Of a DNA stretch of 64,000 bases, positions 29,173 through 64,000 are shown in pieces. The translations under genes and the position numbers were made by a program. Each line of letters begins with the position of its first letter. The first letter of the stretch is position 1. The DNA lies in assembly GCA_026770705.1 (NCBI GenBank), contig JANJGN010000150.1:868001-932000 (forward strand), read 5' to 3'. Under the pieces are notes generated by a model that was given only the letters and a program-made list of their open reading frames with translations, did not search any database and was not told where the DNA came from. Source of the DNA: Isurus oxyrinchus. Its lineage: Eukaryota.

Positions 29173-29559
29173 TTGGACTGTCACAAGAGTGGAAAGGCAA
29201 CACTCCACGAGAGGTGACAGCGCAGGAAGGTTCGTGTGTACAGATTCCATGTAATTACAGTTATCCAGCACGTTTAGTAGGGAAAGCACGTGTCGGAATC
29301 TGGTATGTGATATGGTACACATGGAATACATGGAATACAAGGTCTAGAGGGATCATAGCATTTCACTCCAAGGATCACAATCGCGAGTTAACACGGTTAC
29401 ACCATCGGACCCGGCTGTCTGGAGACCTGAAAGATGGCGAATGTTCCCTGATTATAAACAACATCAGACGGGAAGATGCAGGATATTATTATTTCAGAAT
29501 AGAATTTGACGGCAACAATAGTTACAGCTACTATCCTGAAACCCAGCTTCATGTTTCTG
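29173..29559 (+). CDS. Siglec-like V-set exon (V-a) with essential Arg
   Basis: ccccag|TT GGA ... TCT G|gtaagt, 387 nt, phase 1-1. AQEGSCVQIPC, RTRLSGDLKDGECSLIINNIRREDAGYYYFRIE. Confidence 0.9.
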
Positions 29560-29789
29560 GTAAGTGCTGTGTTATAATTACTCAACAATTCACATCCAAC
29601 ACTCAACGGGAAATAATAGTGTTTGATTTGCTTGTTTTTTGGCCGTGTTAACCAGCGTCACTATTTTTAATGATTTGTCTATTTCTGCTCCCAGATCCAT
29701 GAGCTTATTGTGTGTGATTGAATCCACATCATAGCTGTAACGTAAACCGAGCTGAGGGGTGATGACACCTCCCCCCTGAGTGAAGTGTC

Positions 29790-31810
29790 TCCTCCCCACT
29801 ACACCTTCCACCCCTCACACTGTCCGTGTAAACCCCCGTCCCATCTCCAGCCTCTCTTTCCCCTCCAAAGTCCTTGAACGCGTTTCCATCTCCCGAATCC
29901 GTTCCCATCTTTCCCGGAACTCCATGTTTGAATCCCTCCAATGAGGTTCCCACCCCAGCCACTGTGCTGAAACAGCTCTTATCAAAGTCACAAATGGCAT
30001 CCTGTGTGACTGTGACAAAGGTCAACTTTCCCTCCTCGTCCTTCTCGATCTGTCTGCAGCCTTTGAAACGCTCGACCACACCATCCTCCTCCAACACCTG
30101 TCCACTGTCGTCCAGCTGGGTGGGACTGCTCTCCCCTGGCTCCATTCTTATCCAACTCATCGTAGCCAGAGAATCACTTGCAATGGCTTTGCAGCATCAT
30201 CTGAACAGTGTTAGTTTTCACCTGTCCACTGAGGATCCCCAGCTCTACCTCACCACCACCTCTCTCGACTCCTCCACTGCTGCTAAATTATCAGGCTGCT
30301 TATCCGACATCCAGTACTGGATGGGCAGAAATTCCCTCCAATTAAATATTGGAAAGACTGAAGCCATTATCTTCATTCCCCGCTCCAAACTCTGTTCCCT
30401 CGCTACCAACTCCATTCCTCTCCCTGACAGCTCTCTGAGATTGAAGCCAATCTGTTCACAGCTTTGTTGTCCCATTTGATCCTGAGATGAGCTTCCGGCC
30501 TCATATCTGCGCCCTCACTAACACCGTCTATTTCCACCTCCGTAACATCGTACGACTTCACCCTGTCTCAGCTCATCTGCTGCTGAAACCCTCATCCACA
30601 CCTTCATTACCTCCAGACTCGACTGTTCCAACACACGCTCTACACTCCATAAACTTGAGGCCATCCAAAACTGCTGACCCCGTCCTTACTCACACCAAGT
30701 CCCATTCCCTTATCACCCGCTCTGCTCGATGACCGAGAGTGGCTCCTGGTCAAGCAAAGTCTCAATGTCCAAATTTTCATCTTTGTTTCCTCACTATCCC
30801 TGTAATCTCCTCGTCCTCCTCCAGTACCTACAACCCTCCCTATCTCTGTAACCTCCTCCAGCCCCTACAACACTCCCAATCTCTGTAAATTATTTCAGTC
30901 CCTATAACCACCACTACCTCATAAACCTCTTCCAGCTCCAACAACGGTCCATTTCTCTGTAACCTTCACCAACCGCTGCAACAACCCCTATCTCTGTAAC
31001 ATCCTCCAGTCCCTACAGCACTCTCTATCTCTGTAACCTCCTCCAGTCCCTACAGCACTCTCTATCTCTGTAACCTCATCCAGTCCCTATAACCCCATCC
31101 TGTACCTACAAACCCCCTATCTCCATAACATTTCCCATTCCCGTCCAGCCTCTCTATCTCTGTAACTATCTTTTGCCCCTAAAGACTCCCTTTTACTATA
31201 AATTTCTCCAGTCCCTCCAAACCCCCTGTCTCTGTAACCTACTCAGGCCCCTAAAGCCTGCCTTACCCTGTAACCTCCACCAGTCCCTACACTGCCCCCC
31301 CTTTCACTGTAAGCTCCTCCAGCCCCTACAACCTTCCGTATCTCTGTAAACCCATCCTGCCCCTACAACCCTCCCTATCTCTGTAACCACCTGCATACTG
31401 TACAACCCTCCCTAGCTCTGTAACCTCCTCCAGCCTCTCCAAATTTTCCTAATTTGTAGCCTCTCTGCAGCCTCTGTACAAACTACAGCACCTACAACCC
31501 CCCGAGATCACTGCGCTCCTCCTATTCCAGACTCTTGACCATCACCGGATGCTATCGCTCCAAAATTACCGGCCGTGCCTTCAGTTCCCTGGGAACCTAA
31601 GCTCTGGAATTCCCACCCGAAACCGCTCCCTCTCTCTCTCTCTCTCTCTCTGTCTCTTTCTCTCTGTCTCTCCATAACACCGACATCTTCTGGCCAGCTG
31701 TCGCTAATATCTCCACATGTGTCTGGGTGACATACTTTGTTTTATGACGCTCCTGTGTAGCACCTTGGGGTGATTTGTCATGTTAAAGTTGTTGTGTAAA
31801 TATAAGTTGT
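29790..31810 (+). mobile_element. L2 LINE fragment (RT remnant, internal 37-bp array, 3' end)
   Basis: Frameshifted SKVLER / ETALIKVTNGILCDCDKG / VLLDLSAAFET.DHTILLQ motifs, and LQLNIGKTEAI. Confidence 0.85.
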
Positions 31811-32351
31811 TGCCCTTTGACCCTTGACCCCAGCTTGAGTCTTATTTTTGAGGGAATGTACAACCTCCTTAGATTTCTGACCAAAATGTCATTTGATTAT
31901 TTTTATTGAGCCAATGCCAAGCCCCGATACCGAGCGAGAGCCTCCTCATTTGCTGAGTTTAGGGTGATGAGTCAGCCCCTTAGTCCATAGAGGGGATTCT
32001 CCTCGGTAATGCGCAGCCTTGTTTGTGTCTCTCCACAAGCGCATGAGGGGTTTGTACAGAGGCTGCAGCGCTGGAGGAGGTCTGCACAGGGATCCTGGCC
32101 TGTCCTGAGCCGGTTTTAGCAAGGACCACTCTGGCCTTGGCAGCTGAAAGCCAGCCATTGGACAGATGGGGCCTGTCACAAGGAGCCTGTTAGTCACTCC
32201 CCCCTGTGTCTCCTGTGCTCGGATCCAGACCATGTTGGCTGATGGATCTGGCTCAGGAAGGGTCCTCCCCATGGGACCCCCAGATGGAAGGTGGGTCGAG
32301 CGGGTCAGTCACTTGCATGTTTATTCTGCAGCTTTAATATATTTAGAAGGT

Positions 32352-33130
32352 AAGAATGTAGGAACATAAGAAATAGGGACAGGAGCAGGCCATTCGGCCC
32401 CTCAAGCCTGCTCTCACTGATCTGGTTGTGGCCTTAACTCCATTCTCCTGCCTGTCCCCCAAACCCTTGACTCCCTTGTCGATCAAAAACCTGCCTCACT
32501 CAGCCTTGAGTCTATTCAATGGCCCAGCCTCCACTGCTCTCTGGGGAAGAGAATTCCACAGGCTAGCGCCCCTCTGAGAGAGGAAATTCCTCCTCATCTC
32601 AGTCTTAAATGGGGGAGCCCTCATTCCGAAACTGTGCTCCCTGGTTCTAGATTCCCCCACAAGGGGGAAACATCCTCCCAGCATCCACCCTGTCAAGCCC
32701 CCTCGGAATCGGATATGTTTCAATAAGCTCACCCCTCATTCTTCTAAACTCCAATGGATACAGGCCCAACGTGCTCAACATTTCCTCACAGGACAAACCC
32801 TTTAATCCCAGGAATCAGCCCAGTGAACCTCCTCTGAACTGCCTCCAATGCAGAGTCTATCCCTCCCTAAGTAAGGAGAACAGAACTGTACACACTGCTC
32901 CTGATACAATCTCAACATGTGCAGCTGTTGCAAGACTTCCCTCCTTTTATACTCCATCCCTTTGCAATATAGGCCAACATTCCACTTGCCTTCCTCATTC
33001 CGTGGTGTTCCTGAATGCTGACTTTCTGTGATTCATGTACAAGGACACCCAGATCCCTCTGTACCGCATTCTGCAGCCTCTCTCCATTTAAATAATATTC
33101 TGTTTTTCTATTCTTCCTGCCAAAATAATT
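32352..33130 (-). mobile_element. CR1 LINE 3' end
   Basis: FKTEMRRNFLSQRGASLWNSLPQRAVEA plus the CR1 3' UTR. Very similar to 9705-10170. Confidence 0.9.
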
Positions 33131-33244
33131 TGTTGCCATTCTCCTCAGTATTGACCATCCCCCCAATTCAGCCTTATCTGTAAATATCGGGTTCAGTGGA
33201 TCCACAAACCATTCAGAGATAAATATTGAGATTTCTCTCCCCAG

Positions 33245-33610
33245 CTGGACTGTCACAAGAGTGGAAAGGTGACACTCCACGAGAGGTGACAGCGCAGGAA
33301 GGTTCCTGTGTACAGATTCCATGTCACTACAGTTATCCATCGTGTCTGGAAAACCAACCGCGAGGTGGAGTCTGGTTTAATAATGAGGAACGGGGAACAT
33401 CGTCTGTAGCCTTTCACTCCAAGGATCACAGTCACGAGTTACCACGGTTCCACCATCGGACCCGGCTGTCTGGAGACCTGAAAGATGGTGACTGTTCCCT
33501 GATTATAAACAACATCACACGGGAAGATGCAGGACCTTATTTTTTCAGAATAGAATTTGACAATGGTCCGAGACATAACTATTACCCTGTAACCCAGCTT
33601 CACGTTTCTG
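33245..33610 (+). CDS. Siglec-like V-set exon (V-b) with essential Arg
   Basis: ccccag|CT GGA ... TCT G|gtaagt, 366 nt, phase 1-1. AQEGSCVQIPC, GDCSLIINNITREDAGPYFFRIE. Confidence 0.92.
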
Positions 33611-34338
33611 GTAAGTGCTGTGTTATAATTACTCAACAATTCACATTCAACACTCAATGGGAAATAACACAAACTGTGACGTTTACGTATTAACACAAAA
33701 CACAGCTTATTATAACACACTGTCTGATTCTCAATAACCTGGTGATCGCTTCCAATTCACTCCTAAAGCAACCTCTAATACTCACTTTAATATCAATGAT
33801 TAAATGTATTGACTGTGTCCATCAATGTTATCAGGTTATCCACTCCTATCGATCTCTCTAATCCTGTCTCGAAGTCTGACTTAGCGACAGAAGAAAGATT
33901 CACATTTCTGTAGCACCTTTCACCACCTCAGCATGGACCAAATCACTTCACAGCCAATGAGCTGATTCCTGAATTGTAGTTACTATTGTAATGTGGGAAA
34001 CACAGCAACCAATTTGCACACAGCAAGCTCCCACAAATTGCAAAGTAACAAATGGCCCAGATCGCTGAGTGAATGATGAGGTAGTGCACTCCAAACTCTG
34101 GTCTGCTCCACCACCCTCACCCACTATTATCAGTTCAAGTGTCTCGGAGTGAACGTGTATTAAGCTGAGAGACAGAAACACCAAAGTCTCAAAGCAGGAA
34201 ATTCTCTCCTAATCATTGTAACCTCTCAGATCTGATATCATCCTTGTAAAAGTGCTTTTTCTTGTGGGACTGTGATTTCTATTTGAACTGATGCTTCATG
34301 TTATATTTCTCTAAAAGGATCCATTCTCTGTCTGTTAG

Positions 34339-34635
34339 ATTTCACAGATAAACCCACGATATTCCCTGCTGAAATTATTGCAGGAAAGCGTGTGGATGTA
34401 AGCTGCACCTTCAACACAACGTGCAATGGAACAGCAGCACCTGTCTTAACCTGGGACACTCCCACTGACGTACCTGGATCAGTCTCAAACACTGTAACTC
34501 AGCATGGTGTCACTCTGACCTATACTTCTGTTCTGACCCTGATCCCATCACTCAAACACCACAGACACAATCTCAGCTGCAGAGTGAGATATCCATCTTT
34601 TTCATCGGAGCGGACCCTCGTACTAACTATGCAAG
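34339..34635 (+). CDS. Siglec domain-2 C2-set exon
   Basis: ctgttag|AT TTC ... CAA G|gtaagt, 297 nt. DFTDKPTIFPAEIIAGKRVDVSCTFNTTC...PVLTW...SVLTLIPSLKHHRHNLSCRV. The extra Cys matches the Siglec V-C2 interdomain disulfide. Confidence 0.92.
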
Positions 34636-35479
34636 GTAAGTACGGACACCCTTCATTCTACATCAGCACTCCCTCAGCGCTGACCCTCTGACAGTGCAGC
34701 CCGTTCTCAGTGTTCACATTCTCATGCCTCTCAAAGTGCTTCACTGTCGATAGAAGTTAACTGATCTTTATTTGATTGTTGCTGAATGAAGAGACAAGCT
34801 GTCTAAACTTTACATCTCACACACATTATTTTCCATGGCAACACCTCCTCCAAGTTCTCAGCTTTCCAGTGCCCATTTTTCACATGATGTCCATGTTCAT
34901 AATGGGGATTGCCTATGTAAACATCACGCTGTAGTTACACTCTCCCACCAGTGGTAGCACGGTAACACTTAACCCTTGCATCTCCAAGCTTTTCAAGCAA
35001 TTTCACTTCCTAATTTCCTACTATTCACCTCAACCATTCCCTGTGGGAGCGAGTTCCATATTCTCCCCTCTCTCTGGGTAAAGATTGGAACTGTTTATTA
35101 AGCGGGGGGTGTATGTCCGTGGGGGAGTCCATCCCGATCCTGCCCGATTCACACACACGGCTGAGATGGATTTTCACCCGGCACTAAACGTTTCCAGAAT
35201 TTTCTACAGCACAATCCTGTACACAGCGATGGAGAGAAACATTGGACAGAGAGTCCAACAGCACAATGATCCATTCTCACCAATGTTCCACGCTAAGGAG
35301 AAAGTTCCGATTGTCCACTCTTAGAGTGTTTACAATGAAAACATTCATTCCACATTGAATCCCAGTGGATGGGTCAATATTACAGCAAATGTTGCAGTGA
35401 TATGAAGCTTGATTGTTCAGCCAGAGTGAGAGATTGAAAGCGGAGAGTCAGTGATGATTTCTTTCTGTGTGTTCTCTAG

Positions 35480-35619
35480 ACAGTGGAGGAGAGATTCTGC
35501 ACGTGATCCTGATCCTGGGAATACGAGCTATGATATTCCTTGTGGCTGTGGTTATCACTATCACTGGAGTCTGTGTCTGGGAGAGACAAACAGTGAAAGG
35601 AAGTCGACAGACTGTTTGA
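35480..35619 (+). CDS. Terminal TM exon with intramembrane Arg and short Tyr-free tail (activating-type Siglec-like receptor)
   Basis: ttctctag|AC AGT..., in frame with the C2 exon: DSGGEILHVILILGIRAMIFLVAVVITITGVCVWERQTVKGSRQTV*. Arg codon at 35524-35526. AATAAA near 35687 and 36003. Confidence 0.85.
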
Positions 35620-38600
35620 AGCTTTGTACAGCAACAATCTGGTCAGTCAGTGCGGACAAATAACGTGTGATGTTGTGTTAAGTTGTAATAAAACTGGTCA
35701 GTGTCCTGGTTATAATCATCTCCGTATCATCGAGTCATTCCAGCAATGGAGGAGGACATTTGGCCCATTGAGTCTATGCTGTCTCTCTGTAAAGCAATCC
35801 ACTCAGTCCCATCCCCTGCTCTATCCCCGTATCCCTGCAAATTTATTTCCAATTTCCGTCCAATTTCCTTTTGAAATTGTTCATCGAATAGGAATGAACA
35901 GAAATGTGACGTTGCTAAACTCTGTTCTCTGATTGGAATGTGCTTTCTGAATGCTGCACCTTTTTCATGCTGCGATAGATTGTAAGAAGCATTTGGGTTA
36001 TGAATAAAATTACATTGATTAACTCAAGTGATTAAAATGCTCAGCCTGTTCTGTAGATATTTAAAGATTAAAATTCTTGTTTTGCTGCAAAATACTTGGC
36101 TCAAAGACATAGCTTCCTGTTGTCACGTTTTCCAATCAGATGAATTCCTCTGTCCATCTTTATAATAGAAATTTCCAATGTAAACATGTCACATTGTAAC
36201 TGCACACTCTTGCCAGTGGGTGGTGTGATACCAAAGCTGTCTTGCTGCAGAGAAACAGCGAGAAATATTCCTGTTGTGTGCATGAACTTCATGTTAGCAT
36301 GAGACACAGGCATCAGATGAAATTTTGTGCAATTTGTACAATGTTCTTTAGACAGTGCAGCACTCCCTCAGTTCAAACCCTCTGACAGTGCAGCACTCCC
36401 TCAGTTCAGACCCTCCGACAGTGCAGCACTTCCTCAGTTCAGACCCTCTGACAGTGCAGCACTCTCTCAGTTCAGACCCTCTGATAGTGCAGCACTTTCT
36501 CAGTTCAGACCCTTTGACAGTGCAGCACTCCCTCATTTCAGACCCTCCGACAGTGCAGCACTCCCTCAGTTCAGACCCTCCGACAGTGCAGCACTCCTTC
36601 AGTTCAGACCCTCCGACAGTGTAGCTCTCCCTCAGTTCATACCCTCCGACAGTGCAGCACTCCCTCAGTTCATACCCTCCGACAGTGCCGCACTACCTCA
36701 GTACTTCTCCGCCGATGCTGCCAGACCTGCTGAGTTTTTCCAGGTATTTCTGTTTCTGTTTCTGTTTTGGATTTCCAGCATCTGCAGTTTTTTTGCTTTT
36801 AGTGCTGGGCAGTTCCTCAGCAAGGATTCGGGCCACAAAACATTGCGAGTGCTGTGGGTCTGCGCCACGATTTAGAGAGCTGTGCTTGGCACGCCTATTC
36901 TAGTCCCAGTCCAGTGTGGTGGGGAGAGTCTGGCAGTCCAGGGTTGGTGGTGCCCAGCATGGTGTGAGTGACGTGGTCAGTCCCTCACACACGTCGGTCC
37001 TGGGGGTGGGTGGCTTGATACTAGGCCGCAGGTGGCACAATCCCAGTCAGGGGAGGCATCTGCAGCCTGTCAGTGGGGAGCAGGTAATATAGAGGGTAGG
37101 GCTGGGGGTGGGAATCGAGGGGGGCCGGTGGTCTCTGTAAGTCACAGTACAATGGGCCTCTAGTTGGAGAGAGGTCAGGTCTACATGGGGCATTGGGATG
37201 TCAACATCAGACAGTCTAGGGAGGAGGACTGGGATGTCAACCCCGAACACAATAAGATCAAGGATTAGAGAGGAAGGGAGGAGACTGATTGGAAGGAGGG
37301 GAATGTGCACATTATGCTCCTCCAGCACGATGGGAGGGACTGTGATGGTTACGGGGGTGGGGGGGAGTGACGTGTGAGGGGATAGAAGCTTACCTGGTGG
37401 TATTGCCTCAGCCTCATCCTTTTTCAAGCTGATCCAATGTCGCAGTTGAAGAATAAGCTACAAAACAAATTGGCAGGGGAGGTCTCCCAGGGCCTGTGGG
37501 AGACATCACCCACTGCATCTTCGGCCTGTTTGAAGGGGCACCCGAACAATTCCGGCTTTTCCAAATGATGAGGAAGACACAGCTGCACCCCGAGTCCCCT
37601 ACTGGGGATCCAGAAGGTTGCAATAGCGCTGCGAGGGACTCATGGGCTCCACAGTGACTCCCTAATTAGCGACTGGAAGGTTTATGTTCATTTATCTTTA
37701 TTATCCGTTCATATTGAGCCATGGAGCTCCTGATTTGTCACCTTTCTGTACCTCGTCCAATGCTTCTGTTATCAGGACTTCCACATCGATGTGAAAGAGC
37801 CATGATGATAGCAGACAGTCGCACAATGGGAATGGCACTAGGCCAGTGATCCAGAGGCCCAGGTGAATGCTTTGAAGGCACGGGTTCAAATCCCACCACG
37901 GCAGCTGGAGGAATTTCAATTTGATTAATCAATAAATTTAATTGATTGATACATTTTGTTGCGCATGCTTCAGTCTTGTCTTTTGCACTGGCGTGCTGGG
38001 CTCCTCCATCATTGAGGATGGGGATATTTGTGGAGCCTCCTCCTCCAGTTTAATTGTCCATGACTGGATGTGACTTCTGGAATGCGAAGCTAGTCTCAGT
38101 AATGGTGACCATTTTCAGTTTTTTACCAATGTCAGTTGAGGGATAAATGTTTGCCCCAGGAAAGTGGACATAACTCCACCCCATCCAGCCCCCATCACCC
38201 CCTCCACACATACCCCCCAACTCCTGACGCACTTCATCTAAATTGTGGCCATGGAATCCTCTATATCCACCTGAGAGGGCAGATTGGTTGCCCCAGTTTA
38301 ATGTCTTATCTGAAAGACAGCGCCTTCAACAGTGCAGCACCCCCTCAGTACTGACCCTCCGACTGTGCAGCACTCCCTCAGTACTGACTCTGACAATGCA
38401 GCACCCTCTCAGTACTGACCCTCCGACTGTGCAGCACTCCCTCAGTACTGACCCTCCAACAGTGCAGCACTCCCTCAAGACTGACCCTCCGACTGTGCAA
38501 CACTCCCTCAAAACTGACCCTCTGACAATGCTGCACTCCCTCAGCACTGACCCTCCGACTGTGCATCCCCCCGCCGGTACTGACCCTTCGACTGTGCAGC

Positions 38601-40264: not shown

Positions 40265-40321
40265 CGTGTCCGGGGAATCCACAGATTTCTCAATCGTCGA
40301 AGAACCTAAAGCAGTGTCAAC
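40265..40321 (-). CDS. Hepcidin-like exon 2, arm B copy
   Basis: Same 57-nt exon and splice sites as 17957-18013. Confidence 0.55.
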
Positions 40322-44611: not shown

Positions 44612-44644
<33 letters not shown>

Positions 44645-47990: not shown

Positions 47991-48859
47991 TCCCTCCCTC
48001 AAATACATTCTCTCTCTCTCTCAGACACAAACACTCTCTCACACACTCACACACTTTCCCTAAAAATAACACAATCTCTCTTTCTGTCAAGCACACACTC
48101 TCTCTCACACACACACACTCTCTCTCTCAGACACACACATTCTCTCTCTCTCAAACATTTAACATTTCTCTTCATCTCGCTCTTCTGCTGTCTCTCTCTT
48201 TCTCTCCCTCACACACACACACACTCTCTGTCACAAACACACGCTCTCTCACACACACTCTCTCTCACACACACACACTCTCTGTCACACACACACTCTC
48301 TCTCACACACACTCTCTCTCACACACACACTCTCTCTTTCACAAACACACGCTCTCTCCCACACACTCTCTCTCACACATTCTCACATGCACACTCTCTC
48401 CCTCATATACAAACACTCTCCCTCACACATGCACACTCTCTATCTCTTTTTCTCTCTCACACAGTCTCTCTGTCTCTCTCTGTCTCTCAGACACTCTCTC
48501 TCTCTCTGATACAGAATGTTTTAAGACCTGCTCATGATTTCAGCTCAAAACCCAGGTAGATTCTCCCCAGTGAGGGAGTGGTGAGGGAGTGCTGCACTGT
48601 CAGAGGATCAGTACTGAGGGCGTGCTGCACTGTCAGAGGGTAAGTACTGAGGGAGTGCTGCACTGTCGGAGGGTCGGTACTGAAGGAGTGCTGCACTCTC
48701 AAAGGGTCAGTGCTGAGGGAGTGCTGCACTGTCAGAGGGTGGGCACTGAGGGAATGCTGCTCTGTCAGACCTGCCATATTTCAGATGACATTTGAAATTA
48801 GCAACATGCCTCATGTATAATTATATATCATCAGCTCAAAATAAATAGATTATTCCTGT

Positions 48860-51390
48860 ACGTTTCACTTTTCTGTAAATCGCAGTTTCATTTCCTTAGA
48901 AACCAGGCTTGTGTGATCACTATTTTTAAATAACGTTAATAATAAAGATGCAACAATCCACACGCACACATGTACACACACACACACACTCACTCACAAG
49001 GGTACATAGACAGACACACACTCACTCACACATGTTCACCCAGACACACACACACAGACACACACTGACTCACAGAAGCAGACAGACAGACACACAAACA
49101 GACACACACTGACTCACAGAAGCAGACAGACAGACACACACACAGACACACAAGTCATAATTAAAAAGTTAGAGTCCAATAAAAATTTAAAAGAATATAT
49201 GATTAATACAATTGCTTGTCTTTGAGGTGTAGATTGTTGACGTTTGCAGCTGTTCAAGGTTAATTGGTTTCCTGTGGCATCCTGGTGGTGATTTGATTCA
49301 GATTTGCACTTTGTTGAAGATGCGCTGTTAGCTTCAGAAAGAGAGAGAGAGAGAGAGAGAGAATTTCTGCTCTTTTCCAGCAGTGTTTTTGAGTGACTGC
49401 CATCTTTCTTTTTCCTCCTATTTTCTCTTATATCTGCTTGACAGAACCTGTTGTTAAACTCCTGTCTGTATATTCCCAAAGGGAATTCGATCAGCATGTC
49501 TTGCATTCATTGTCGCAGACCAAGTAATCCCTTTTTTGATCTTTGCATCTCTGAAACATTTGATGCATTTCAAGATATAAATCAACAGGAGATGAAGGCA
49601 TTTCATCTTCCACAAGAGGTTTTGAATGACTGATGAATATCTGCATGGTGAGCAGTTCCCATTAGCTTGATAGACCTACAGTGATCAGAGTCCAGCGCTT
49701 TGCATTTTTAATGGAGCCCCTGTTTCAGGTGGACCCTGACACACCTCAGTGAGAACTTTCATGCAACATGTCTGTAGTGCAATTCATTTGAAGCTTTCCA
49801 GAGAAGTGATCAAGTTTGCAGTATCAGCAATCAGGTGACTCGTGACAGCCATTTTTGATCAATGCCTAATCTTGTACTTTTGAAAAACAGGTCTCCTTTA
49901 AACAGTTCAATACGTTTTTGGCTCGTTGGTTAAGTTGAAGGAAGCTCTGTTATGGCATAACAGATGGTAAATGCTGAGCTGTTCAAATCCTGGAGGGAAA
50001 CTTGAAACAACTGTCACAACTAATTTCCAACTTGTATGTTTTGAGATGTGGGCTTTGAATTCAGTAGTAATGAGATTAAGATGTTTAAGAGGTAATTATG
50101 GTTGGTTGAAAAAAAGGGTTTAAAATATATTTTCCCCCAAATGCAATTTCCAAAGCAAGTCTCTTTGATTGTTAAGAATGAACCAATTAAACCACGTTTG
50201 GTGGAGTCAAAGAAAGAGTCAGTTTATTAGTTACCTAACTGGAGGAAAAATAATNNNNNNNNNNNNNNNNNNNNNNNNNNNNNNNNNNNNNNNNNNNNNN
50301 NNNNNNNNNNNNNNNNNNNNNNNNNNNNNNNNNNNNNNNNNNNNNNNNNNNNNNNNNNNNNNNNNNNNNNNNNNNNNNNNNNNNNNNNNNNNNNNNNGAC
50401 AGACAAATGGACANNNNNNNNNNNNNNNNNNNNNNNNNNNNNNNNNNNNNNNNNNNNNNNNNNNNNNNNNNNNNNNNNNNNNNNNNNNNNNNNNNNNNNN
50501 NNNNNNNNNNNNNNNNNNNNNNNNNNNNNNNNNNNNNNNNNNNNNNNNNNNNNNNNNNNNNNNNNNNNNNNNNNAATAATTATAGAGTCCAATAAAAAAT
50601 TAAAAGAGTCGTTTGCTTGTACTACAGCGTAGGCTGTGAAGTTTGAAGCTGTTTTAAATTAGTTGGTTTTCTGTAGATTCCTGTATTTTATCTGGCTCAG
50701 ACTTGCACATTGTTGAAGACATTCTGTTAGCTTCAGACAGAGAGAGAGAGAGGGAGAAATCATTTCTGCTCTTTTCCAGCAGTGTTTGTGGAAGACTGCC
50801 ATATTTCTTTTTCCCCTCCTTTCTCTTATATCTGCTTGGCAGAACCATTTGTTAAACTCCTGTCTGTATATCCCTGAAGTCAATTCGATCAGCATGTTTT
50901 GCATTCATTGTTATAGACCAAGTATTCCCATTTTTTTATCTTTGCATCTCTGAAACCTTTGATGCATTTCAAGATATAAATCAACAGGAGACGGGGGTAT
51001 TGTATCCCCCACAGGGGGTTTTGAATGGTTGATGATTATCCGCTTGGTGAGCAGTTCCCAATGTTTTGATTGAACTACAGCTGATCAAAGTCCAGCACTT
51101 TACATTTTAATGCCTTCCTTTTAAGAGTGTCTCTATTTGAAGTGGACCCTGACACACCCCAGGCGTGAACTTCCATGCAACAGGTCTGCAGTGCAATTTA
51201 TTTGAACCTTTCCAGAGAAGTGATCAACTTCACAGTATCAGCAATCAGGTGACTTGTGTCAGCCATTTTTGATCTGTGTACAATCTTGTATTTCTTTGAA
51301 AAACAGGTCGCTTTTAGACAGTTCAATATGTCTTTGGTCTCTTAGTTAAGTTGTAGGAAGCTCTTAATCGCAGTTTGTTGTCATTGGGAT
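48860..51390. mobile_element. Two tandem diverged LTR-like repeats
   Basis: About 49170-49946 and 50580-51365 are similar direct copies. The second unit starts TGTTATGG at about 49947, like the element at 21865. Confidence 0.55.
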
Positions 51391-52399
51391 ATTGTCTTTG
51401 TGTGTGTGTTTGTGTGTGTGAGTGAGTGTGTGAGTGAATGTGTGTGTTTGTGTCTGTCTGNNNNNNNNNNNNNNNNNNNNNNNNNNNNNNNNNNNNNNNN
51501 NNNNNNNNNNNNNNNNNNNNNNNNNNNNNNNNNNNNNNNNNNNNNNNNNNNNNNNNNNNNNNNNNNNNNNNNNNNNNNNNNNNNNNNNNNNNNNNNNNNN
51601 NNNNNNNNNNNNNNNNNNNNNNNNNNNNNNNNNNNNNNNNNNNNNNNNNNNNNNNNNNNNNNNNNNNNNNNNNNNNNNNNNNNNNNNNNNNNNNNNACAG
51701 AGTGAAACCTCCTTGAGTCTGGCCACTGTGTTTAACATTTAAGCCACACAGACAGGATGTGGTTAAAAGGTGAAACCACAAGGAGTGAGTGTGTTTCCCA
51801 GTGACTGTCTCTCTGTGGGTTTCCTGTGGGTTTCTATGAACTGCCTGTGGTTTTAAAAAAAATCTTCCAACCCCACATGCACGGCATCAAATAAGGAATT
51901 GGAAGCTGCAGCTCAGAGAGTAACTAGTCCCCCGAGAATTCACAGCCCCTCAAACACAGATTAACAGCATTAATCCTGACCGTCAGCCCACTCACTCATT
52001 GCCTCTTGTCTCAGACACTAGAAAGTGGAAGTTAAGGCCGGATTTTCACTCCCGGGTTGGGGGACACAGAGACGGCAGGAAAAAAGAACAAAATAGGTCT
52101 CGAGCACACAGAGCTCCAAGGGAAGGGTCGTGCTGCAGCTAAGGTGTGAGACATGGTACATTCCCCGGATGCAGCATTGAGGCTTGTATGTCTACACAGC
52201 TGATGTAGGTGCACATGGAACACATGTGAATGAGCACTGTGATGCACACACACCCTGGAGAGTAATATCCCTCCATGCACTACATATCAGGCTAACATCA
52301 ACTCATGTTGTCATTGCTGACTCACAGGGTTGAAGCAGGTCACAGAGACGGCTGCGTCTGGGGTTGGGCCAGCCTCCCTGAGACTCACCGTCCTAACAT

Positions 52400-55420: not shown

Positions 55421-55610
55421 TTAACAGGTGTAAAATTATACATAACCCATAAGCTTCTCGCAATCTTTTACAGCATGGAAAAAGGTGCAGCATTCAGAAA
55501 GCTCACTCAGAACAGATTTAAAAAAAAGTTGAGCAACATCATATTTCTGTTCATTACTATTTGGCCATGTTGGCTGCACACACCCCACAGCCCCGCTCCC
55601 TGTTTCACAC

Positions 55611-55859
55611 TCAGTTTTTCTGGAACCTGATCTGTGTGTATTCCGTGTCCTCGCTCCTGTGCACAGTCCTGTCACCGCTGGGCAGCTTTGAAAAGTTGAT
55701 GTTGGCGTAGAGAAGGTCGGCGGTATTGTCGGGGTTCCCATGTCCAACATCGCCTCCCACTGGACCTTCAGAGAGATCCCGGGGAGCTGGGGTCTCCCCC
55801 TCACTAGTTGTGTCTCTGGTTGTTTCCCGGGGCTCAGAAATCAGCAAGTTCTGTTCATC
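55611..55859 (-). CDS. Inhibitory Siglec-like gene: terminal exon with ITIM (LLYANI) and ITSM (TEYTQI)
   Basis: ctgtag|GAT GAA CAG, phase 0. DEQNLLISEP...DLLYANINFSKLPSGDRTVHRSEDTEYTQIRFQKN*. Confidence 0.9.
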   Translation of the reverse strand, partial: DEQNLLISEPRETTRDTTSEGETPAPRDLSEGPVGGDVGHGNPDNTADLLYANINFSKLPSGDRTVHRSEDTEYTQIRFQKN

Positions 55860-56784
55860 CTACAGAGAAATGGAAACAGAAGACATCCTCACATCATTTA
55901 CTGGCACTGATAGGGTTAAATTATTGTGCAGCCTCATTAGTGTCAGTCGTGTCTCAGTGGGTTTAAGCCTTTTTTTCACTCTCTTTCTCTGTCTCTCTTT
56001 CTCTCTTGCTTTCTCTCTCTCTTTATAATTTAATCTCTATCACACTCCAACAGTGCAGCACTCCCTCAGTACTGACCCTCTGACAGTGCAGCACTCCCTC
56101 AGTACTGACCCTCTGACAGTGCAGCACTCCCTCACTACTGACCCTCCGACAGTGCAGTACTCCCTCAGTACTGACCCTCTGACAGTGCAGCACTCCCTCA
56201 GTACTGACCCTCTGACAGTGCAGCACTCCCTCAGTACTGACCCTCTGACAGTGCAGCACTCCCTCAGTACTGACCCTCTGACAGTGCAGCACTGCCTCAG
56301 TACTGATACTCCGCACGTCCAGCACACGATCAGTACTGACCATCAGACAGTGCAACACTCCCTCAGTACTGACACTCTGACAGTGCAACACTCCCTCAGT
56401 ACTGACCCTCCGACAGTGCTGCACTCCCTCAGTACTGATCCTCTGACAGTGCAACACACCCTCAGTACTGACCCTCCGACAGTGCAGCACTCCCTCAGTA
56501 CTGACACTCCGACAGTGCATCACTCCCTCACTACTGACCCTCTGACAGTGCAGCACTCCCTCACTACTGACATCAGGTGCCTTGTCATTATTGTGTTCAG
56601 GTTTCTGGTCAAAGAGCGAGTGATGGAGGGAGACAGAGGCAGGGAGCGAGAGACAGTGCTGACCACTGAGCCATTGCTGACTTCACAGGGCGATATCTGT
56701 GTGTAACCCGGCTGAGAATCTGGTATACGTGTTGTCTACAGACTGAGGTTGAAGCTATGGAGTGAGTGTAAACAGCTCCTGTAC

Positions 56785-56866
56785 CTGGTGCTTCACAGAG
56801 AGTGACCTGAGGGTCAATGCAATGTAATTGGTCCCTGAACCTCTGTCCTCCATCGCTGTCTTTCTC
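56785..56866 (-). CDS. Inhibitory Siglec-like gene: first cytoplasmic exon
   Basis: ttgcag|G AGA AAG ... CAG|gtacag, 82 nt, RKTAMEDRGSGTNYIALTLRSLSVKHQ. Phases fit the neighbouring exons. Confidence 0.85.
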
Positions 56867-57744: not shown

Positions 57745-57841
57745 TTTCTCACACAGATGAAGATGAAGATTCCAGCCAGGAAAATACTCAACATGATCCC
57801 AGCCGTGAATAATCCTACTGTCCCTTTACTGGAGTCTCTAC
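57745..57841 (-). CDS. Inhibitory Siglec-like gene: TM exon (uncharged)
   Basis: ttttacag|GT AGA ... AGA AA|gtaagt, 97 nt, phase 1 to 2. RDSSKGTVGLFTAGIMLSIFLAGIFIFICVRK. Confidence 0.88.
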
Positions 57842-58660: not shown

Positions 58661-58727
58661 GTTCCACAGTGATGGTTATGAACCCCTCCACTGCTCCATG
58701 TTCATTCTCTGCCACACACTGATAGTC
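58661..58727 (-). pseudogene. 5'-truncated membrane-proximal C2-set exon remnant
   Basis: Only DYQCVAENEHGAVEGFITITVE and the donor remain. The acceptor and the first 215 nt are deleted. Confidence 0.85.
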
Positions 58728-59295: not shown

Positions 59296-59333
<38 letters not shown>

Positions 59334-59389
59334 TGTGTATGTGTGTGTGTGTGTGTGTGTGAGTGATGTTGAAGTTTGCAGTAACTCAC

Positions 59390-59671
59390 GTTCCACAGTG
59401 ATGGTTATGAATCCCTCCACTGCTCCATGTTCATTCTCTGCCACACACTGATAGTCTCCAGTGTCCCTGGATGTAACGTGAGGAATCACCAACCACAGCT
59501 CATTGTTGGAACTTGTTCTGTTCATTGGGACATTAAGATGTCGCCACGTCAGGTTAGAAGCTGGGAAGCTCTCGACAGAGCAGATTATCACTGCAGAATT
59601 CCCCTCAATTATATTGATCCATGAAGCGTTAATCATATCAAGAGAATTGATTGAGAGATTCCGTGGTGCAT
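59390..59671 (-). CDS. Tandem C2-set Ig exon
   Basis: 282 nt, phase 1-1. APRNLSINSLDMINASWINIIEGNSAVIICSVESFPASNLTW...DTGDYQCVAENEHG. Confidence 0.9.
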
Positions 59672-60463
59672 CTAAAAACATAGAAAGATTTTAACGTGAG
59701 CAAACATAGTGCACAGCAAGACTCCATGCATCATGTCTCTGTATCTGATGTCTGAATGCATTTTTAGGTAACTTCCCTCAAGATAACATCTTATGCCACA
59801 TTTTTAATGGACACTGCCTATGTAAACTGTCACACTGCAATTGCATTCTCCCACCAGTAGAGGTGTTGTCCATTTAGATTGAAAGAAGCTTTCTTTCACA
59901 TCCTCAGGATTTCGCCAATGGCTTGACAGGCAATGTTTGATTGATGGAGCACTGAGGGGTAAATCTACCATTCTCTGTTCAGGAGGTTGCTCATCCAATT
60001 CAGGGACTTGTTGATCTGGAATTTACCTTCCTTCAACACAGAATCAGAGCTGATACTGAGACTCCAGTGCAGCACTGAGAGAGGACAGTGAAATCACATT
60101 TGTGTATGTGTGTGAGTGTGTGAGTGTTTGTGTTTCTGCACAAGTGAGTGTGCTTGTGTGTGTATGCACACATGTATCTGTGTGTGCGCATGCACGCATG
60201 TCTGTGTGTCTACGTCTGTCCAAGAGTGAGTGAATGTGCATGTGTGTGTCTATGTGTGGGCATGAAATTGTGTGTGTGTGTGAGTTGTGTATATATATTC
60301 CTCTGTATGTGTTTGCANNNNNNNNNNNNNNNNNNNNNNNNNNNNNNNNNNNNNNNNNNNNNNNNNNNNNNNNNNNNNNNNNNNNNNNNNNNNNNNNNNN
60401 NNNNNNNNNNNNNNNNNNNNNNNNNNNNNNNNNNNNNNNNNNNNNNNNNNNNNNNTAACTCAC

Positions 60464-60745
60464 GTTCCACAGTGATGGTTATGAACCCCTCCACTGCTCC
60501 ATGTTCATTCTCTGCCACACACTGATAGTCTCCAGTGTCCCTGGATGTAACGTGAGGAATCACCAACCACAGCTCATTGCTGGAACTTGTTCTGTTCATT
60601 GGGACATTAAGATGTCGCCACGTCAGGTTAGAAGCTGCGAAGCTCTCGACAGAGCAGATTATCACTGCAGAATTCCCCTCAATTATATTGATCGATGAAG
60701 CGTTAATCATATCAAGAGAAGTAATTGATAGGTTCCGTGGTGCAT
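60464..60745 (-). CDS. Tandem C2-set Ig exon
   Basis: 282 nt, near-identical copy (ESFAAS and TSSSN variants), AG/GT intact. Confidence 0.9.
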
Positions 60746-61733
60746 CTAAATACAAATAAAGGTTTCATTGTGAGCAAACACAGTGCACAGCAAGACTCCA
60801 GGTATCATCTCTCTCTATTTGGTGTCTATGTGCATTTCAAGGTTTCTGTCCTGTTTTAAGTTTCTATGTCAACTTTTATAATGGTCACTGCCGGTGTTTT
60901 TCTTTTTGTACATTCATGGGAAGTGGATGTATCTATCTAGACCAGCATTTATTACCCATCCCTAATTGCCCTTGAGGAGGTGGTGGTGAGTTTTTCACCC
61001 CCACAGAATTCCCAGCCTCTGACCGGCTCCTGTAGCCACAGTATTTATGGCCGGTCCAGTTAGTTGTTTGGTTAACACCCCCCAGGATGTTGATTGTGGG
61101 GGATTCAGTGACCGTAAACTCACTGAACATCAAGGGAAGTTGGTTAGATTCTCTCTTGTTGGACATGATCACTGCCTGGTACTTGTGATGCATTAATTGT
61201 CATTTCTCAGCCCAAGCTGAGTGTTGTTCAACTCTTGCTGCATGTGGATATGTAAACTGTCACGCTGTAATTACAGCCTTCCACCAGAGGAGACACTGTT
61301 GGGCTAGAAGAAAAGAAAATGTCTTTCACATCATCAGGATGTTCACAGGGATTTGACAGTGGAGGAATTGCTTTAGAATAATGGGGTATTGAGTGATAAA
61401 CCTACAATTCTCTGTGCAGGGGGCTGCTCGTCCAATACAGGGTCTTGTTCAGCTGATGTCGTCAGTGTTTCAGAGCAGAATCTGGAGCAACACTCCAGTG
61501 CAGCACAGGGAGAACAGACAACGCACACATGTCTGTGTGTGTGTGTGAGCAAGCACACGTGTGATTCTGTGTATGTTTCCTTCTGTGTGTGTGAGCATGC
61601 AGGTGTACACACCTGTGCACATGTGGGATTGCACATGAATGCTTGTTTGTGTGCACGTGTCTGTGTGTGTGTGTGTATGTGTATGTGTGTGTGTGTGTAT
61701 GTGAGAGTAATGTTGAAGTTTGTGTTAACTCAC

Positions 61734-62015
61734 GTTCCACAGTGATGGTTATGAATCCCTCCACTGCTCCATGTTCATTCTCTGCCACACACTGATAGTC
61801 TCCAGTGTCCCTGGATGTAACGTGAGGAATCACCAACCACAGCTCATTGTTGGAACTTGTTCTGTTCATTGGGACATTAAGATGTCGCCACGTCAGGTTA
61901 GAAGCTGGGAAGCTCTCGACAGAGCAGATTATCACTGCAGAATTCCCCTCAATTATATTGATCGATGAAGCGTTAATCATATCCAGAGAAGTAATTGAGA
62001 GATTCTGTGGAGCAT
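61734..62015 (-). CDS. Tandem C2-set Ig exon
   Basis: 282 nt, near-identical copy (APQNLSIT), AG/GT intact. Confidence 0.9.
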
Positions 62016-62723
62016 CTAAAAACAAATAAAGTTTTTAATGTGAGCAAGCAGCATGCACAGCAAGACTCCATGCATCATCTCTCTGTATCTGATGTCTGTA
62101 TGCATGTCCAGATACCTTCCCTCCATATAACTTCCACTGTCAAATTTATAATGGGCACTGCCGATGTAAACAGTCAAACTACAGTTACATTCTCCCACCA
62201 GTAGAGGTGCTGTCCACCTAGAATGAAAGAAACTTCCTTGCACATCCTCAGGATTTTGCCAAGGGCTTGATAGGCAATGAATTGTATTTGATCGATGGAG
62301 CTCTGAGGGGTAAGTCTACAATTCTCTGTTCAGGAGGTTGCTCCATCCAATTCAGGGTCTTGTTGATCTGGAGTTTACCTTCCTTCAACACAGAATCGGA
62401 GCTGATACCAAGACTCCAGTGCAGCCCTGAGAGAGGAGAGGGACCTCATGTGTGTGTATGTGTGTGTTTGTGTTTCTGCACATGTGAGTGTGTTTGTGTG
62501 TGTATGCACGCATGTGTCTGTGTGTGCGTGTGTGTATGTGTTTTGCATATGTTTGTGTCTCTTAGTGTATACGTCTGTGCATGTGTGAACGTGAGTGCAT
62601 GTGTATGTCTATATGTGTGCCTGTGTGAGTGTGTGCGTGTGAGTTGAGTGTATGTGAGTTTCTGTGTATGTTTTTGCACGTGTATGACTGTGTGTGTAAA
62701 TGTACACGTATGTGTCTACACAT

Positions 62724-62784
<61 letters not shown>

Positions 62785-62827
62785 TGTGTGCGTGTGTGAG
62801 AGAGATGTTGAGTTGGCATTAACTCAC

Positions 62828-63109
62828 GTTCCACAGTGATGGTTATGAACCCCTCCACTGCTCCATGTTCATTCTCTGCCACACACTGATAGTCTCCAGT
62901 GTCCCTGGATGTAACGTGAGGAATCACCAACCACAGCTCATTGTTGGAACTTGTTCTGTTCATTGGGACATTAAGATGTCGCCACGTCAGGTTAGAAGCT
63001 GGGAAGCTCTCGACAGAGCAGATTATCACTGCAGAATTCCCCTCAATTATATTGATCGATGAAGCGTTAATCATATCAAGAGAATTAATTGAGAGATTCA
63101 ATGGTGCAT
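62828..63109 (-). CDS. Tandem C2-set Ig exon
   Basis: 282 nt, near-identical copy (APLNLSIN). The acceptor pyrimidine tract is weakened (tatatagatatag). Confidence 0.85.
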
Positions 63110-63823
63110 CTATATCTATATATAAAGATTTTAACGTGAGCAACATAGTGCACAAGACACCATGCATCATGTCTCTGTATCTGATGTCTGAATGCATTTC
63201 CAGGTAACTTCCCTCAGGATAAGGTCTTATGGCACACTTATAATTGACACTGCCTATGTAAACTGTCACACTGCAATTGCATTCTCCCACCAGTAGAGGT
63301 GTTGCCCATCTAGAATGAAAGAAGTTTGCTTTCACATCCTCAGGATTTCGCAAAGGGCTTGACAGGCAATGAATTGTATTTGATCGATGGAGCACTGAGG
63401 GGTAAATCTACAATTCACTGTTCGGGATTTTGCTCATCCAATTCAGGGTCTTGTTGATCTGGAGTTTACCTTCCTTCAACACAGAATCGGAACGCATACT
63501 AAGGCTCCAGTGCAGCACTGAGAGAGGACAGGGAACTCACGCGTGTGTATGTGTGTGTTTGTGTTACTGCACATGTGAATGCGTTTGTGTGTGTATGCAC
63601 ACATGTATCTGTGTGTGTGCATGCGCATGTGTCTGTGTGTCTACGTCTGTCCATGAGTGAGAGTATGTGCATGTGTGTGTCTATGTGTGGGCATGAATAT
63701 GTGTGTGTTTGAGATGGGTGTGTATTTTCCTGTGTATGTGTTTGTACGTGTATGACTGTGTGTGTATAATTATGCATGTGTGTGCCTACATGTGTCTGTG
63801 TGTGTGTGTGTGTGTTTGTGTGT

Positions 63824-63876
<53 letters not shown>

Positions 63877-63902
63877 TGATGTTGAAGTTTGCAGTAACTC
63901 AC

Positions 63903-64000
63903 ATTCCACAGTGATGGTTATGAACCCCTCCACTGCTCCATGTTCATTCTCTGCCACACACTGATAGTCTCCAGTGTCCCTGGATGTAACGTGAGGAATC
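63903..64000 (-). CDS. Tandem C2-set Ig exon, cut by the window edge
   Basis: IPHVTSRDTGDYQCVAENEHGAVEGFITITVE followed by donor gtgagt. Confidence 0.85.

What the first reader, a model, noticed from the sequence alone, without database searches (positions are those of the whole stretch)
29173..64000. Candidate paired activating/inhibitory Siglec-like receptor system in a cartilaginous fish
Seen: a plus-strand V-C2-TM gene with an intramembrane Arg and a short Tyr-free tail converges on a minus-strand multi-C2 gene with an uncharged TM, ITIM (LLYANI) and ITSM (TEYTQI). They share homologous 3' flanking sequence (35885-36010 versus the reverse complement of 55440-55560). Known: mammalian Siglec-5/-14 and Siglec-11/-16 pairs have this charged-TM versus ITIM split and are kept similar by gene conversion. 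Inference: an independently evolved paired sialic-acid receptor system in sharks. I cannot confirm novelty without a literature and database search, and the inhibitory gene's V domain lies outside the window.
Basis: partly seen in the sequence, partly recalled or inferred. Interest (0 to 1): 0.85.

Follow-up and report, generated by a model that had tools for sequence, protein, structure and literature searches.

The report
Shark Siglec cluster: activating and inhibitory genes
This stretch of a shark genome holds two neighbouring Siglec-type immune receptor genes, one built like an "accelerator" (a charged membrane anchor and almost no tail) and one like a "brake" (inhibitory tail motifs). Both are real, but the window cannot show that they form a matched pair, and the design is already present in automatic shark gene predictions.

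Summary
The plus strand carries V1 (29173-29559), V2 (33245-33610), C2 (34339-34635) and a terminal exon (35481-35619). That exon encodes a membrane helix with an Arg (ILILGIRA) and a 12-residue Tyr-free tail. Transcript contigs from three studies show the V2|C2 and C2|TM splices. The minus strand carries at least four full, near-identical stalk C2 exons (a fifth is cut by the window end). It also has an uncharged TM, a middle cytoplasmic exon and a tail with ITIM LLYANI and ITSM TEYTQI. These motifs are conserved across sharks and rays.

The V exons are Siglec-type, with YFFRIE aligned to the Siglec-5 Arg motif. They fall in an elasmobranch-only clade and are not SIGLEC15 orthologues. The shared 3' block is real but has a third copy, so it marks the family, not this pair.

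The inhibitory gene's V lies outside the window, and the ectodomains differ in length. A broken Siglec-like V gene, a 10-kb inverted-repeat arm and three N runs lie between the two genes.

RefSeq already predicts such proteins in many sharks, and I found no paper on them. This scan has reported the same design on other DNA of this genome.

The parts
29173..29559 (+). V1: intact Siglec-type V-set exon (387 nt, phase 1-1) with YYFRIE
   Evidence: Sequence. Pfam V-set 1.9e-10 and Ig_CD22 3.2e-10. 79% nt identity to V2. Its use in this gene's mRNA was not tested.
33245..33610 (+). V2: Siglec-type V-set exon (366 nt) with YFFRIE and the CxxxxC...C cysteine pattern
   Evidence: Pfam. PDB phmmer best hits are Siglec-5, sialoadhesin, MAG, Siglec-10/8 and CD33. 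Spliced to the C2 exon in contigs of 4 runs.
34339..34635 (+). First C2-set exon (297 nt)
   Evidence: Pfam C2-set_2 2.7e-9. Weak PDB matches to domain 2 of MAG, CD33 and Siglec-10. 80-91% identical to shark RefSeq Siglec-like proteins. Joints on both sides.
35481..35619 (+). Terminal exon: TM helix with Arg (ILILGIRA), 12-residue Tyr-free tail, stop at 35617-35619
   Evidence: Sequence. 75-80% identical, with Arg kept, to the C-termini of P0086 and P0006 (Scyliorhinus torazame) and P0024 (Chiloscyllium punctatum). Joint 34635|35481.
35885..36044 (+). 3' block shared with two other Siglec 3' ends; contains AATAAA near 36004
   Evidence: blastn and alignment. Contigs of paralogues enter it at 35884 (table 7).
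55429..55561 (-). Copy of the shared 3' block, about 50 nt after the minus gene's stop
   Evidence: 79.7% over 133 bases to 35887-36014; alignment A1.
55611..55859 (-). Last exon of the inhibitory gene: ITIM LLYANI, ITSM TEYTQI, stop
   Evidence: Sequence. 78-85% identical to tails of P0003, P0175 and P0179. Motifs conserved in sharks and rays.
56785..56866 (-). Middle cytoplasmic exon (RKTAMEDRGSGTNYIALTLRSLSVKHQ)
   Evidence: Sequence with AG/GT borders; matches P0003 and P0017.
57745..57841 (-). Uncharged TM exon (VGLFTAGIMLSIFLAGIFIFICVRK)
   Evidence: Sequence. 65-82% identical to P0003 and P0179.
58661..58727 (-). Relic (3' third) of a stalk C2 exon with its donor site
   Evidence: blastn 98.6% over 72 bases; donor GTGAGT.
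59390..63109 (-). Four full stalk C2 exons (59671-59390, 60745-60464, 62015-61734, 63109-62828), each 282 nt, phase 1-1, with four N-glycosylation sequons
   Evidence: Pfam Ig_3 and I-set. 92-98% identical to stalk domains of Cetorhinus and Carcharodon proteins.
63903..64000 (-). Fifth stalk C2 exon, cut by the window end
   Evidence: Note s1-871774 says the array runs on past 64000; I did not check this.
60318..60455 (.). N run inside an intron of the stalk array, 8 nt after a donor site
50255..51696 (.). Three N runs in intergenic DNA between the two genes; a roughly 1.4-kb tandem repeat (49238-51364) overlaps the first two
   Evidence: continuity not tested.

Best explanation
The window is a piece of a large, elasmobranch-specific Siglec-like gene cluster built from interchangeable exon modules: V, first C2, stalk C2 and alternative membrane/tail cassettes.

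The plus gene encodes a short receptor, V2 (perhaps V1-V2), then one C2, then a membrane helix with a buried Arg and a 12-residue tail without Tyr. The likely mechanism is that the V domain binds a sialylated glycan through the conserved Arg. The membrane Arg then pairs with an acidic residue of an ITAM adaptor (DAP12- or FcR-gamma-like), which activates the cell.

The minus gene encodes a long receptor with five or more near-identical glycosylated stalk domains, an uncharged helix and ITIM plus ITSM. After Tyr phosphorylation these motifs would recruit SHP-type phosphatases and damp signalling.

Shown here: the exons, the splices of the plus gene, Siglec-type V features, and conservation of both cassettes in other sharks. 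Inferred: ligand, adaptor, phosphatase recruitment. The two genes are cluster neighbours of opposite signalling type. A matched pair is possible but not shown.
For: - Gene models and motifs were read from the sequence.
- The splices 33610|34339 and 34635|35481 appear in contigs of 4 runs from 3 studies, with exon-only coverage in X5 and X6.
- V2 is most similar to solved Siglec V domains. YFFRIE aligns with YFFRVE of Siglec-5, and EGSCVQIPCHYSYP aligns with EGLCVLVPCSFSYP.
- The closest proteins are RefSeq Siglec-like predictions from sharks, at 70-87% identity.
- The V tree gives a selachian clade and a wider elasmobranch clade, each with SH-aLRT 99. Arg-TM proteins (P0006, P0024) and ITIM/ITSM proteins (P0001, P0003, P0005, P0012, P0014) are interleaved in it.
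- The Arg-TM cassette is 75-80% conserved in two other species with ILILGIRA invariant. LLYAxI...TEYxxI is conserved from sharks to rays.
- In other sharks an Arg-TM protein has V domains 85-95% identical to a long-stalk protein of the same species. The S. torazame partner P0204 has ITIM plus ITSM. The C. punctatum partner P0180 has an odd C-terminus and only a TEY-type motif.
Against: - No leader exon was found. The conserved family leader MIGKSYFLLSLLQ has no match on the plus strand upstream of V1, so the 5' end of the plus gene is open.
- The RNA evidence consists of assembled contigs at 95% identity or more in a multi-copy family. The contigs differ from the window at fixed places (33573, 34570, 35622), so they may come from an allele, another individual or a near-identical paralogue.
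- No adaptor, phosphatase or glycan binding was tested.
- The inhibitory gene's V domain is not in the window.
- Linkage of the two genes runs across three untested N runs.
Confidence: 0.7

Rival explanations
1. The two genes are a true matched pair. The minus gene's unseen V and first C2 are nearly identical to those of the plus gene and are kept alike by gene conversion, as in Siglec-5/-14 and Siglec-11/-16.
For: The genes have opposite signalling ends and lie in one cluster. A 3' block is shared. Such V-matched couples exist in S. torazame (P0006 and P0204, 85-90%) and C. punctatum (P0024 and P0180, 95%). Carcharodon long-stalk proteins carry V and first C2 domains 74-87% and 90% identical to the plus gene's.
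Against: The V domain is not in the window, so this is untested. The plus gene has no stalk domains and the minus gene has five or more. The 3' block is only 75-80% alike and has a third copy at 24118-24277. Another broken Siglec-like gene and an inverted-repeat arm lie between them.
Confidence: 0.2
2. The plus gene is a non-signalling or decaying copy (a decoy, or a pseudogene in the making) and not a working activating receptor.
For: No leader exon was found in the window. The gene sits in a rearranged region, between the arms of an inverted duplication, alongside orphan tail exons and V exons broken by a retroelement.
Against: All four exons are open with intact splice sites. The mRNA is spliced in three studies. 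The Arg-TM cassette is conserved in other sharks.
Confidence: 0.12
3. The plus gene is the shark SIGLEC15 orthologue.
For: It has the same layout (V, one C2, a basic residue in the TM), and one ray relative is auto-named Siglec-15.
Against: The TM residue is Arg, not Lys. The tail is 12 residues. Siglec-15 is only the 25th PDB hit (E 1.2e-8 against 8.5e-14 for Siglec-5). The V exon sits inside an elasmobranch-only clade together with ITIM proteins. The auto-named ray protein P0019 in fact has a TEYASI tail.
Confidence: 0.02
4. The receptors keep the Siglec fold but bind something other than sialic acid.
For: V1 and V2 differ mostly in loop regions (68% aa identity). The family is expanding fast, which is typical of pathogen-driven receptors.
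Against: The essential Arg and the Siglec cysteine pattern are kept in V1 and V2.
Confidence: 0.2

Closest known systems
Primate paired Siglecs (Siglec-5/-14, Siglec-11/-16)
   Same: Siglec V domain with the essential Arg. One member has a basic TM residue and a short tail, the other has ITIM plus a membrane-distal ITIM-like/ITSM motif. Both lie in one gene cluster (PMC4042635, PMC5701461 for the mammalian pairs).
   Different: The shark genes belong to an elasmobranch-only clade, so any pairing arose separately. For this couple the ectodomain likeness is untested, the stalk lengths differ greatly, and no gene conversion tract is seen.
RefSeq Siglec-like predictions of sharks and rays (for example XP_072325011.1 and XP_072326180.1 of Scyliorhinus torazame, XP_072409577.1 of Chiloscyllium punctatum, XP_078389734.1 of Cetorhinus maximus)
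   Same: They share the same leader, V, first C2, stalk C2, Arg-TM cassette and ITIM/ITSM tail, at 70-98% identity per module.
   Different: None is identical to the window's exons. Their names (Siglec-8, -10, -12, -13, -14, CD33-like, MAG-like, CD22-like) are automatic and do not reflect orthology.
Siglec-15
   Same: V plus one C2 plus a TM with a basic residue; described as conserved from fish to mammals (PMC7226832).
   Different: Siglec-15 has Lys, not Arg, and a longer tail. It is a much weaker sequence match, and the plus gene belongs to a different clade.
Mammalian CD33-related Siglecs
   Same: Short V-C2 ectodomains, and a tail with ITIM then TEYxEI-like motif. The Tyr-Tyr spacing is similar: 23 residues here and 24 in the mammalian protein P0030.
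   Different: There is no detectable tail homology by BLASTP. The V domains are roughly equidistant from CD33-related Siglecs, sialoadhesin and MAG. Bony fish are reported to lack CD33-related Siglecs (PMC7226832).

Membership tests
Siglec (I-type lectin) family | N-terminal V-set Ig domain with the conserved strand-F Arg that binds the sialic acid carboxylate | tested here: met
   YFFRIE (V2) and YYFRIE (V1). V2 aligns with YFFRVE of Siglec-5. The top PDB hits are all Siglecs.
Siglec (I-type lectin) family | Siglec cysteine pattern: an extra Cys before the B-strand Cys in V, and three Cys in the first C2 (for the inter-domain disulfide) | tested here: met
   EGSCVQIPC...GDCSL in V2 aligns with Siglec-5. 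VSCTFNTTC...LSCRV in the C2 exon.
Siglec (I-type lectin) family | Sialic-acid-dependent ligand binding | not testable with these tools
   Needs recombinant V-Fc on glycan arrays with an Arg mutant.
Paired activating/inhibitory receptors | One member with a charged TM residue and a short tail without signalling motifs, the other with ITIM | tested here: met
   ILILGIRA plus a 12-residue tail, against LLYANI and TEYTQI with an uncharged TM. Both cassettes are conserved across species.
Paired activating/inhibitory receptors | Near-identical ligand-binding domains in the two members | tested here: inconclusive
   The inhibitory gene's V lies beyond 64000. In other sharks an Arg-TM protein and a long-stalk protein of one species share 85-95% V identity.
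Paired activating/inhibitory receptors | Ectodomain likeness maintained by gene conversion | tested here: inconclusive
   The only shared tract in the window is a 130-160-base 3' block, 75-80% alike in three copies. That is no sign of recent conversion, but the relevant exons are outside the window.
Paired activating/inhibitory receptors | Association of the charged-TM member with an ITAM adaptor | not testable with these tools
   No shark adaptor sequence was in hand; needs co-expression and co-precipitation.
SIGLEC15 orthologue | TM Lys and closest sequence kinship to Siglec-15 | tested here: not met
   The TM residue is Arg. Siglec-15 scores E 1.2e-8 against 8.5e-14 for Siglec-5. V2 sits in the elasmobranch clade.
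Mammalian CD33-related Siglec orthologue | V domain nested within the tetrapod CD33-related clade | tested here: not met
   V1 and V2 fall in a clade whose named members are all sharks or rays (SH-aLRT 99). The mammalian representatives P0030 and P0050 lie outside it. Caveat: this was a quick tree of the top 150 representatives, rooted at midpoint, with few named anchors.

The most novel reading that the evidence does not exclude
The Arg-TM gene and the convergent ITIM/ITSM gene are a true matched pair whose binding domains are kept alike by exchange within a palindrome-rich locus. On this reading, brake/accelerator Siglec pairs arose independently in cartilaginous fish, the earliest-branching jawed vertebrates, although bony fish are said to lack CD33-type inhibitory Siglecs.
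Probability: 0.2. Interest if true: 0.6.

Novelty: new member of a known kind. Interest (0 to 1): 0.4.

Why it matters
Paired activating and inhibitory Siglecs are described in papers only for mammals. They are read there as a host answer to pathogens that exploit inhibitory Siglecs. A teleost study states that fish genomes lack CD33-related inhibitory Siglecs (PMC7226832) and does not mention cartilaginous fish. This locus adds one more expressed Arg-TM gene beside an ITIM/ITSM gene in a shark. Together with the RefSeq models, it shows that the same modular design exists in an elasmobranch-only Siglec expansion. That makes convergent evolution of brake/accelerator lectin receptors testable in an early-branching vertebrate. 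The value of this particular window is limited: the pair relation cannot be shown here, and the same design has been reported elsewhere in this genome.

Tried and rejected
- **Leader exon of the plus gene.** Pattern scans and a low-stringency tblastn with 16 shark leaders found nothing convincing. The only candidate is 28516-28535 (MLLSLK plus G, with a GC donor), which is at chance level.
- **Tail homology to mammalian CD33-type tails.** BLASTP of the tail exon against the mammalian protein P0030 was not significant. Only the motif order and spacing are alike.
- **The minus gene's own full-length protein.** The search for homologous proteins with P0012 residues 330-751 gave lamniform proteins with stalk domains 94-98% identical. 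None matched all exons, so the missing V domain was not recovered.
- **Notes on the DNA beyond 64000.** Only titles were available.
- **Papers on shark DAP12 or FcR-gamma.** Nothing useful was found. One paper search was wasted on unspecific terms.
- **Remnants of ITIM-type exons near the Arg-TM exon.** None were found by tblastn or blastn in 34636-35885.
- **Joined exons.** Exons were never joined into a spliced protein for any search or fold; each was searched by reference on its own. Once, in a script, I strung the three 3' exons of the minus gene together only to count their length.
- **N runs.** Continuity across the N runs was not tested with reads, because the single read-laying run went to the plus gene.

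Full report
**Scope and limits.** I checked the finding exon by exon, always by reference. 

**N runs first.** The window has six N runs, and four lie in the finding.
- 60318-60455 begins 8 nt after the donor GTGAGTTA of the stalk exon 60745-60464. The other four copies carry a (CA)n run at that place. The repeat unit that holds it is 1074 bases long, against 1075, 1094 and 1270 for its neighbours. It is therefore intronic and no reading frame crosses it.
- 50255-50397, 50414-50574 and 51461-51696 are intergenic, and the first two fall within a roughly 1.4-kb tandem repeat (49238-49948 matches 50637-51364 at 82%). They are at least 3.7 kb from any exon.
- I did not test continuity across the three intergenic N runs. 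The physical linkage and convergent orientation of the two genes therefore rest on the assembly.

**The plus gene.** The sequence shows four phase-1 exons with AG/GT borders:

| Exon | Coordinates |
|---|---|
| V1 | 29173-29559 |
| V2 | 33245-33610 |
| First C2 | 34339-34635 |
| Terminal TM exon | 35481-35619 |

- The last exon encodes SGGEILHVILILGIRAMIFLVAVVITITGVCVWERQTVKGSRQTV and a stop. It has one Arg inside the helix and a 12-residue tail without Tyr.
- Pfam calls V-set and Ig_CD22 for both V exons and C2-set_2 for the C2 exon.
- Against solved structures, V2 is closest to Siglec-5 (8.5e-14). Next come sialoadhesin, MAG, Siglec-10, Siglec-8, CD33 and Siglec-7. Siglec-15 (1.2e-8) and CD22 (2.4e-6) are far weaker.
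- YFFRIE lies on YFFRVE of Siglec-5, and EGSCVQIPCHYSYP lies on EGLCVLVPCSFSYP. V1 keeps YYFRIE.

**RNA evidence.** I laid contigs of four runs from three studies on 30100-36099.
- All four runs carry the joint 33609/10 to 34338/9 and the joint 34633-35 to 35478-81, both with GT..AG ends.
- In X5 and X6 the exon bins are covered and most intron bins are empty, which fits RNA.
- Caveats: these are assembled contigs at 95% identity or more, in a multi-copy family. They differ from the window at fixed places (33573, 34570, an extra T after 35622). They may come from another individual, an allele or a near-identical paralogue.
- Some contigs join a V-exon end to a V-exon start. This fits the multi-V RefSeq models, but it does not show that V1 is used here.

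**Missing 5' end.** The family leader MIGKSYFLLSLLQ is almost invariant in 16 shark and ray proteins. It has no match upstream of V1 on the plus strand. The only candidate, 28516-28535, is at chance level. This is the main weakness of the plus gene model.

**The minus gene**.

| Exon | Coordinates |
|---|---|
| Tail exon | 55859-55611 |
| Middle cytoplasmic exon | 56866-56785 |
| Uncharged TM exon | 57841-57745 |
| Relic of a stalk exon | 58727-58661 |
| Stalk C2 exons (282 nt each) | 59671-59390, 60745-60464, 62015-61734, 63109-62828 |
| Fifth stalk exon, cut by window end | from 63903 |

- The tail exon ends ...ADLLYANINFSKLPSGDRTVHRSEDTEYTQIRFQKN.
- The TM exon encodes GRDSSKGTVGLFTAGIMLSIFLAGIFIFICVRK.
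- The stalk exons are 97-98% alike, while their introns are 87-90% alike. Each carries four N-glycosylation sequons.
- The tail motifs are not chance. LLYA(N/S)I and TEY(A/T)xI, 23 residues apart, are kept in shark proteins from six species, and as LYAQL...TEYASI in rays.

**The shared 3' block.** A third copy lies at 24118-24277, downstream of an orphan tail exon on the plus strand. Transcript contigs of paralogues run into the block at 35884. It is a family 3' remnant, 75-80% alike in all three comparisons. It says nothing special about these two genes and shows no recent conversion.

**Surroundings.**
- The plus gene sits between the arms of a large inverted duplication: 2420-19945 against 48684-38329, in blocks of 85-96% identity.
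- Each arm holds a V exon of another Siglec-like subfamily, cut at the same codon by a gag-bearing retroelement (10198-10506 on plus, 45333-45032 on minus).
- Only the right arm keeps a leader exon (46198-46155).
- Between the left arm and V1 lie two orphan tail exons (20244-20489 and 23145-23390; LLYANPQV, so the ITIM is spoiled, plus TEYAQI) and an orphan middle exon.
- The two genes of the finding are therefore not direct neighbours. They face each other over 19.4 kb that holds a broken gene, a repeat arm and three N runs.

**Relatives.**
- A full HMMER scan with V2 gave 1430 hits. The best are RefSeq predictions from Scyliorhinus, Cetorhinus, Mustelus, Chiloscyllium, Rhincodon, Carcharodon, Stegostoma and Hemiscyllium. 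They are auto-named Siglec-8, -10, -11, -12, -13, -14 or CD33-like.
- The Arg-TM cassette recurs at 75-80% identity, with ILILGIRA invariant, in P0086 and P0006 (S. torazame) and P0024 (C. punctatum). P0086 has the same short layout as the plus gene.
- A second search gave lamniform proteins whose stalk domains are 94-98% identical to the minus gene's. None matches all exons, so the missing V could not be recovered.

**Tree.** I built a quick maximum-likelihood tree of 188 V domains.
- V1 and V2 fall in a selachian clade (SH-aLRT 99), inside a wider clade whose named members are all sharks or rays (SH-aLRT 99).
- The next branches out are shark MAG-like proteins, then sturgeon and paddlefish, frog and mammalian proteins.
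- Arg-TM and ITIM/ITSM proteins are interleaved in the selachian clade.
- Within one species, P0006 (Arg-TM) shares 85-90% V identity with P0204 (ITIM plus ITSM). P0024 (Arg-TM) shares 95% with P0180, a long-stalk protein whose predicted C-terminus is odd and carries only a TEY-type motif.
- The paired design is therefore real at family level and arose apart from the primate pairs.
- Limits: the search was quick, the tree is rooted at midpoint, there are few named anchors, and no named human Siglecs are in it.

**Literature.** Searches for Siglec together with shark, cartilaginous fish or elasmobranch terms found no paper describing these genes. The whale shark genome paper only lists Siglecs among Ig families. 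A teleost study states that fish genomes lack CD33-related inhibitory Siglecs, and it does not mention cartilaginous fish (PMC7226832). The library does not hold most subscription papers.

**Earlier notes of this scan.** Follow-ups on other DNA of the same genome already reported shark Siglec genes with swapped tails, with an Arg-TM cassette and with RNA support. My tests agree with them for this locus.

**Verdict.** It is a new member of a known kind, already present in automatic annotation and undescribed in the papers I could search.

Noticed in passing
2420-19945 (+) and 48684-38329 (-): A large inverted duplication in blocks of 85-96% identity. It encloses the central 18 kb that holds the Arg-TM gene and the orphan tail exons.
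   Followed up: partly
10198-10506 (+) and 45333-45032 (-); leader 46198-46155 (-): Twin V exons of a second Siglec-like subfamily (about 30% identical to V1 and V2). Both are cut at the same codon (..DVYY|TQF*) by a retroelement with a gag-like reading frame. Only the right arm keeps a leader exon (MGEVGLILIFISLLQ), which sits in a 418-base arm-specific piece.
   Followed up: partly
20244-20489, 21628-21750, 23145-23390 (+): Orphan cytoplasmic exons of an ITIM-type gene, upstream of V1 on the same strand. The tails read LLYANPQV, so the ITIM position +3 is Pro, and they keep TEYAQI, as in Carcharodon P0017 and P0152. No TM or ectodomain exon goes with them in the window.
   Followed up: partly
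29173-29559 and 33245-33610: Two intact V exons in a row (79% nt, 68% aa identity). RefSeq models of other sharks have 2-4 V domains, and some contigs show V-to-V joints. Whether V1 is spliced to V2 here is open.
   Followed up: partly
59390-64000 (-): The stalk exons are 97-98% alike while the introns between them are 87-90% alike. They are 94-98% identical in protein to stalk domains of Cetorhinus and Carcharodon proteins. This points to strong constraint or homogenisation of this module.
   Followed up: partly
36350-36705, 38323-38744, 40713-40975, 48582-48769, 56042-56571, 19548-20105, 22765-23003: A 33-base minisatellite (reads ...QHSLSTDPLTV... in one frame) recurs seven times, on both strands. 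It lies next to several of the Siglec 3' ends.
   Followed up: no
16065-16166 (+) and its mirror near 42000 (-): A signal-peptide-like short reading frame (MGSSQMKWRLVLFTLTLLLSLQLS) lies in the stretch that another note (s1-868921) calls hepcidin-like. I did not verify this. If true, it would recall (from memory) the MAG-CD22-HAMP neighbourhood of human chromosome 19.
   Followed up: no
P0007, P0011, P0025, P0028, P0036 (other sharks and rays): A third tail type with two closely spaced Y-x-N-[VIM] motifs (for example DIYENCQIEDSIYENV) is attached to V domains of the same clade. It is not present in this window.
   Followed up: no
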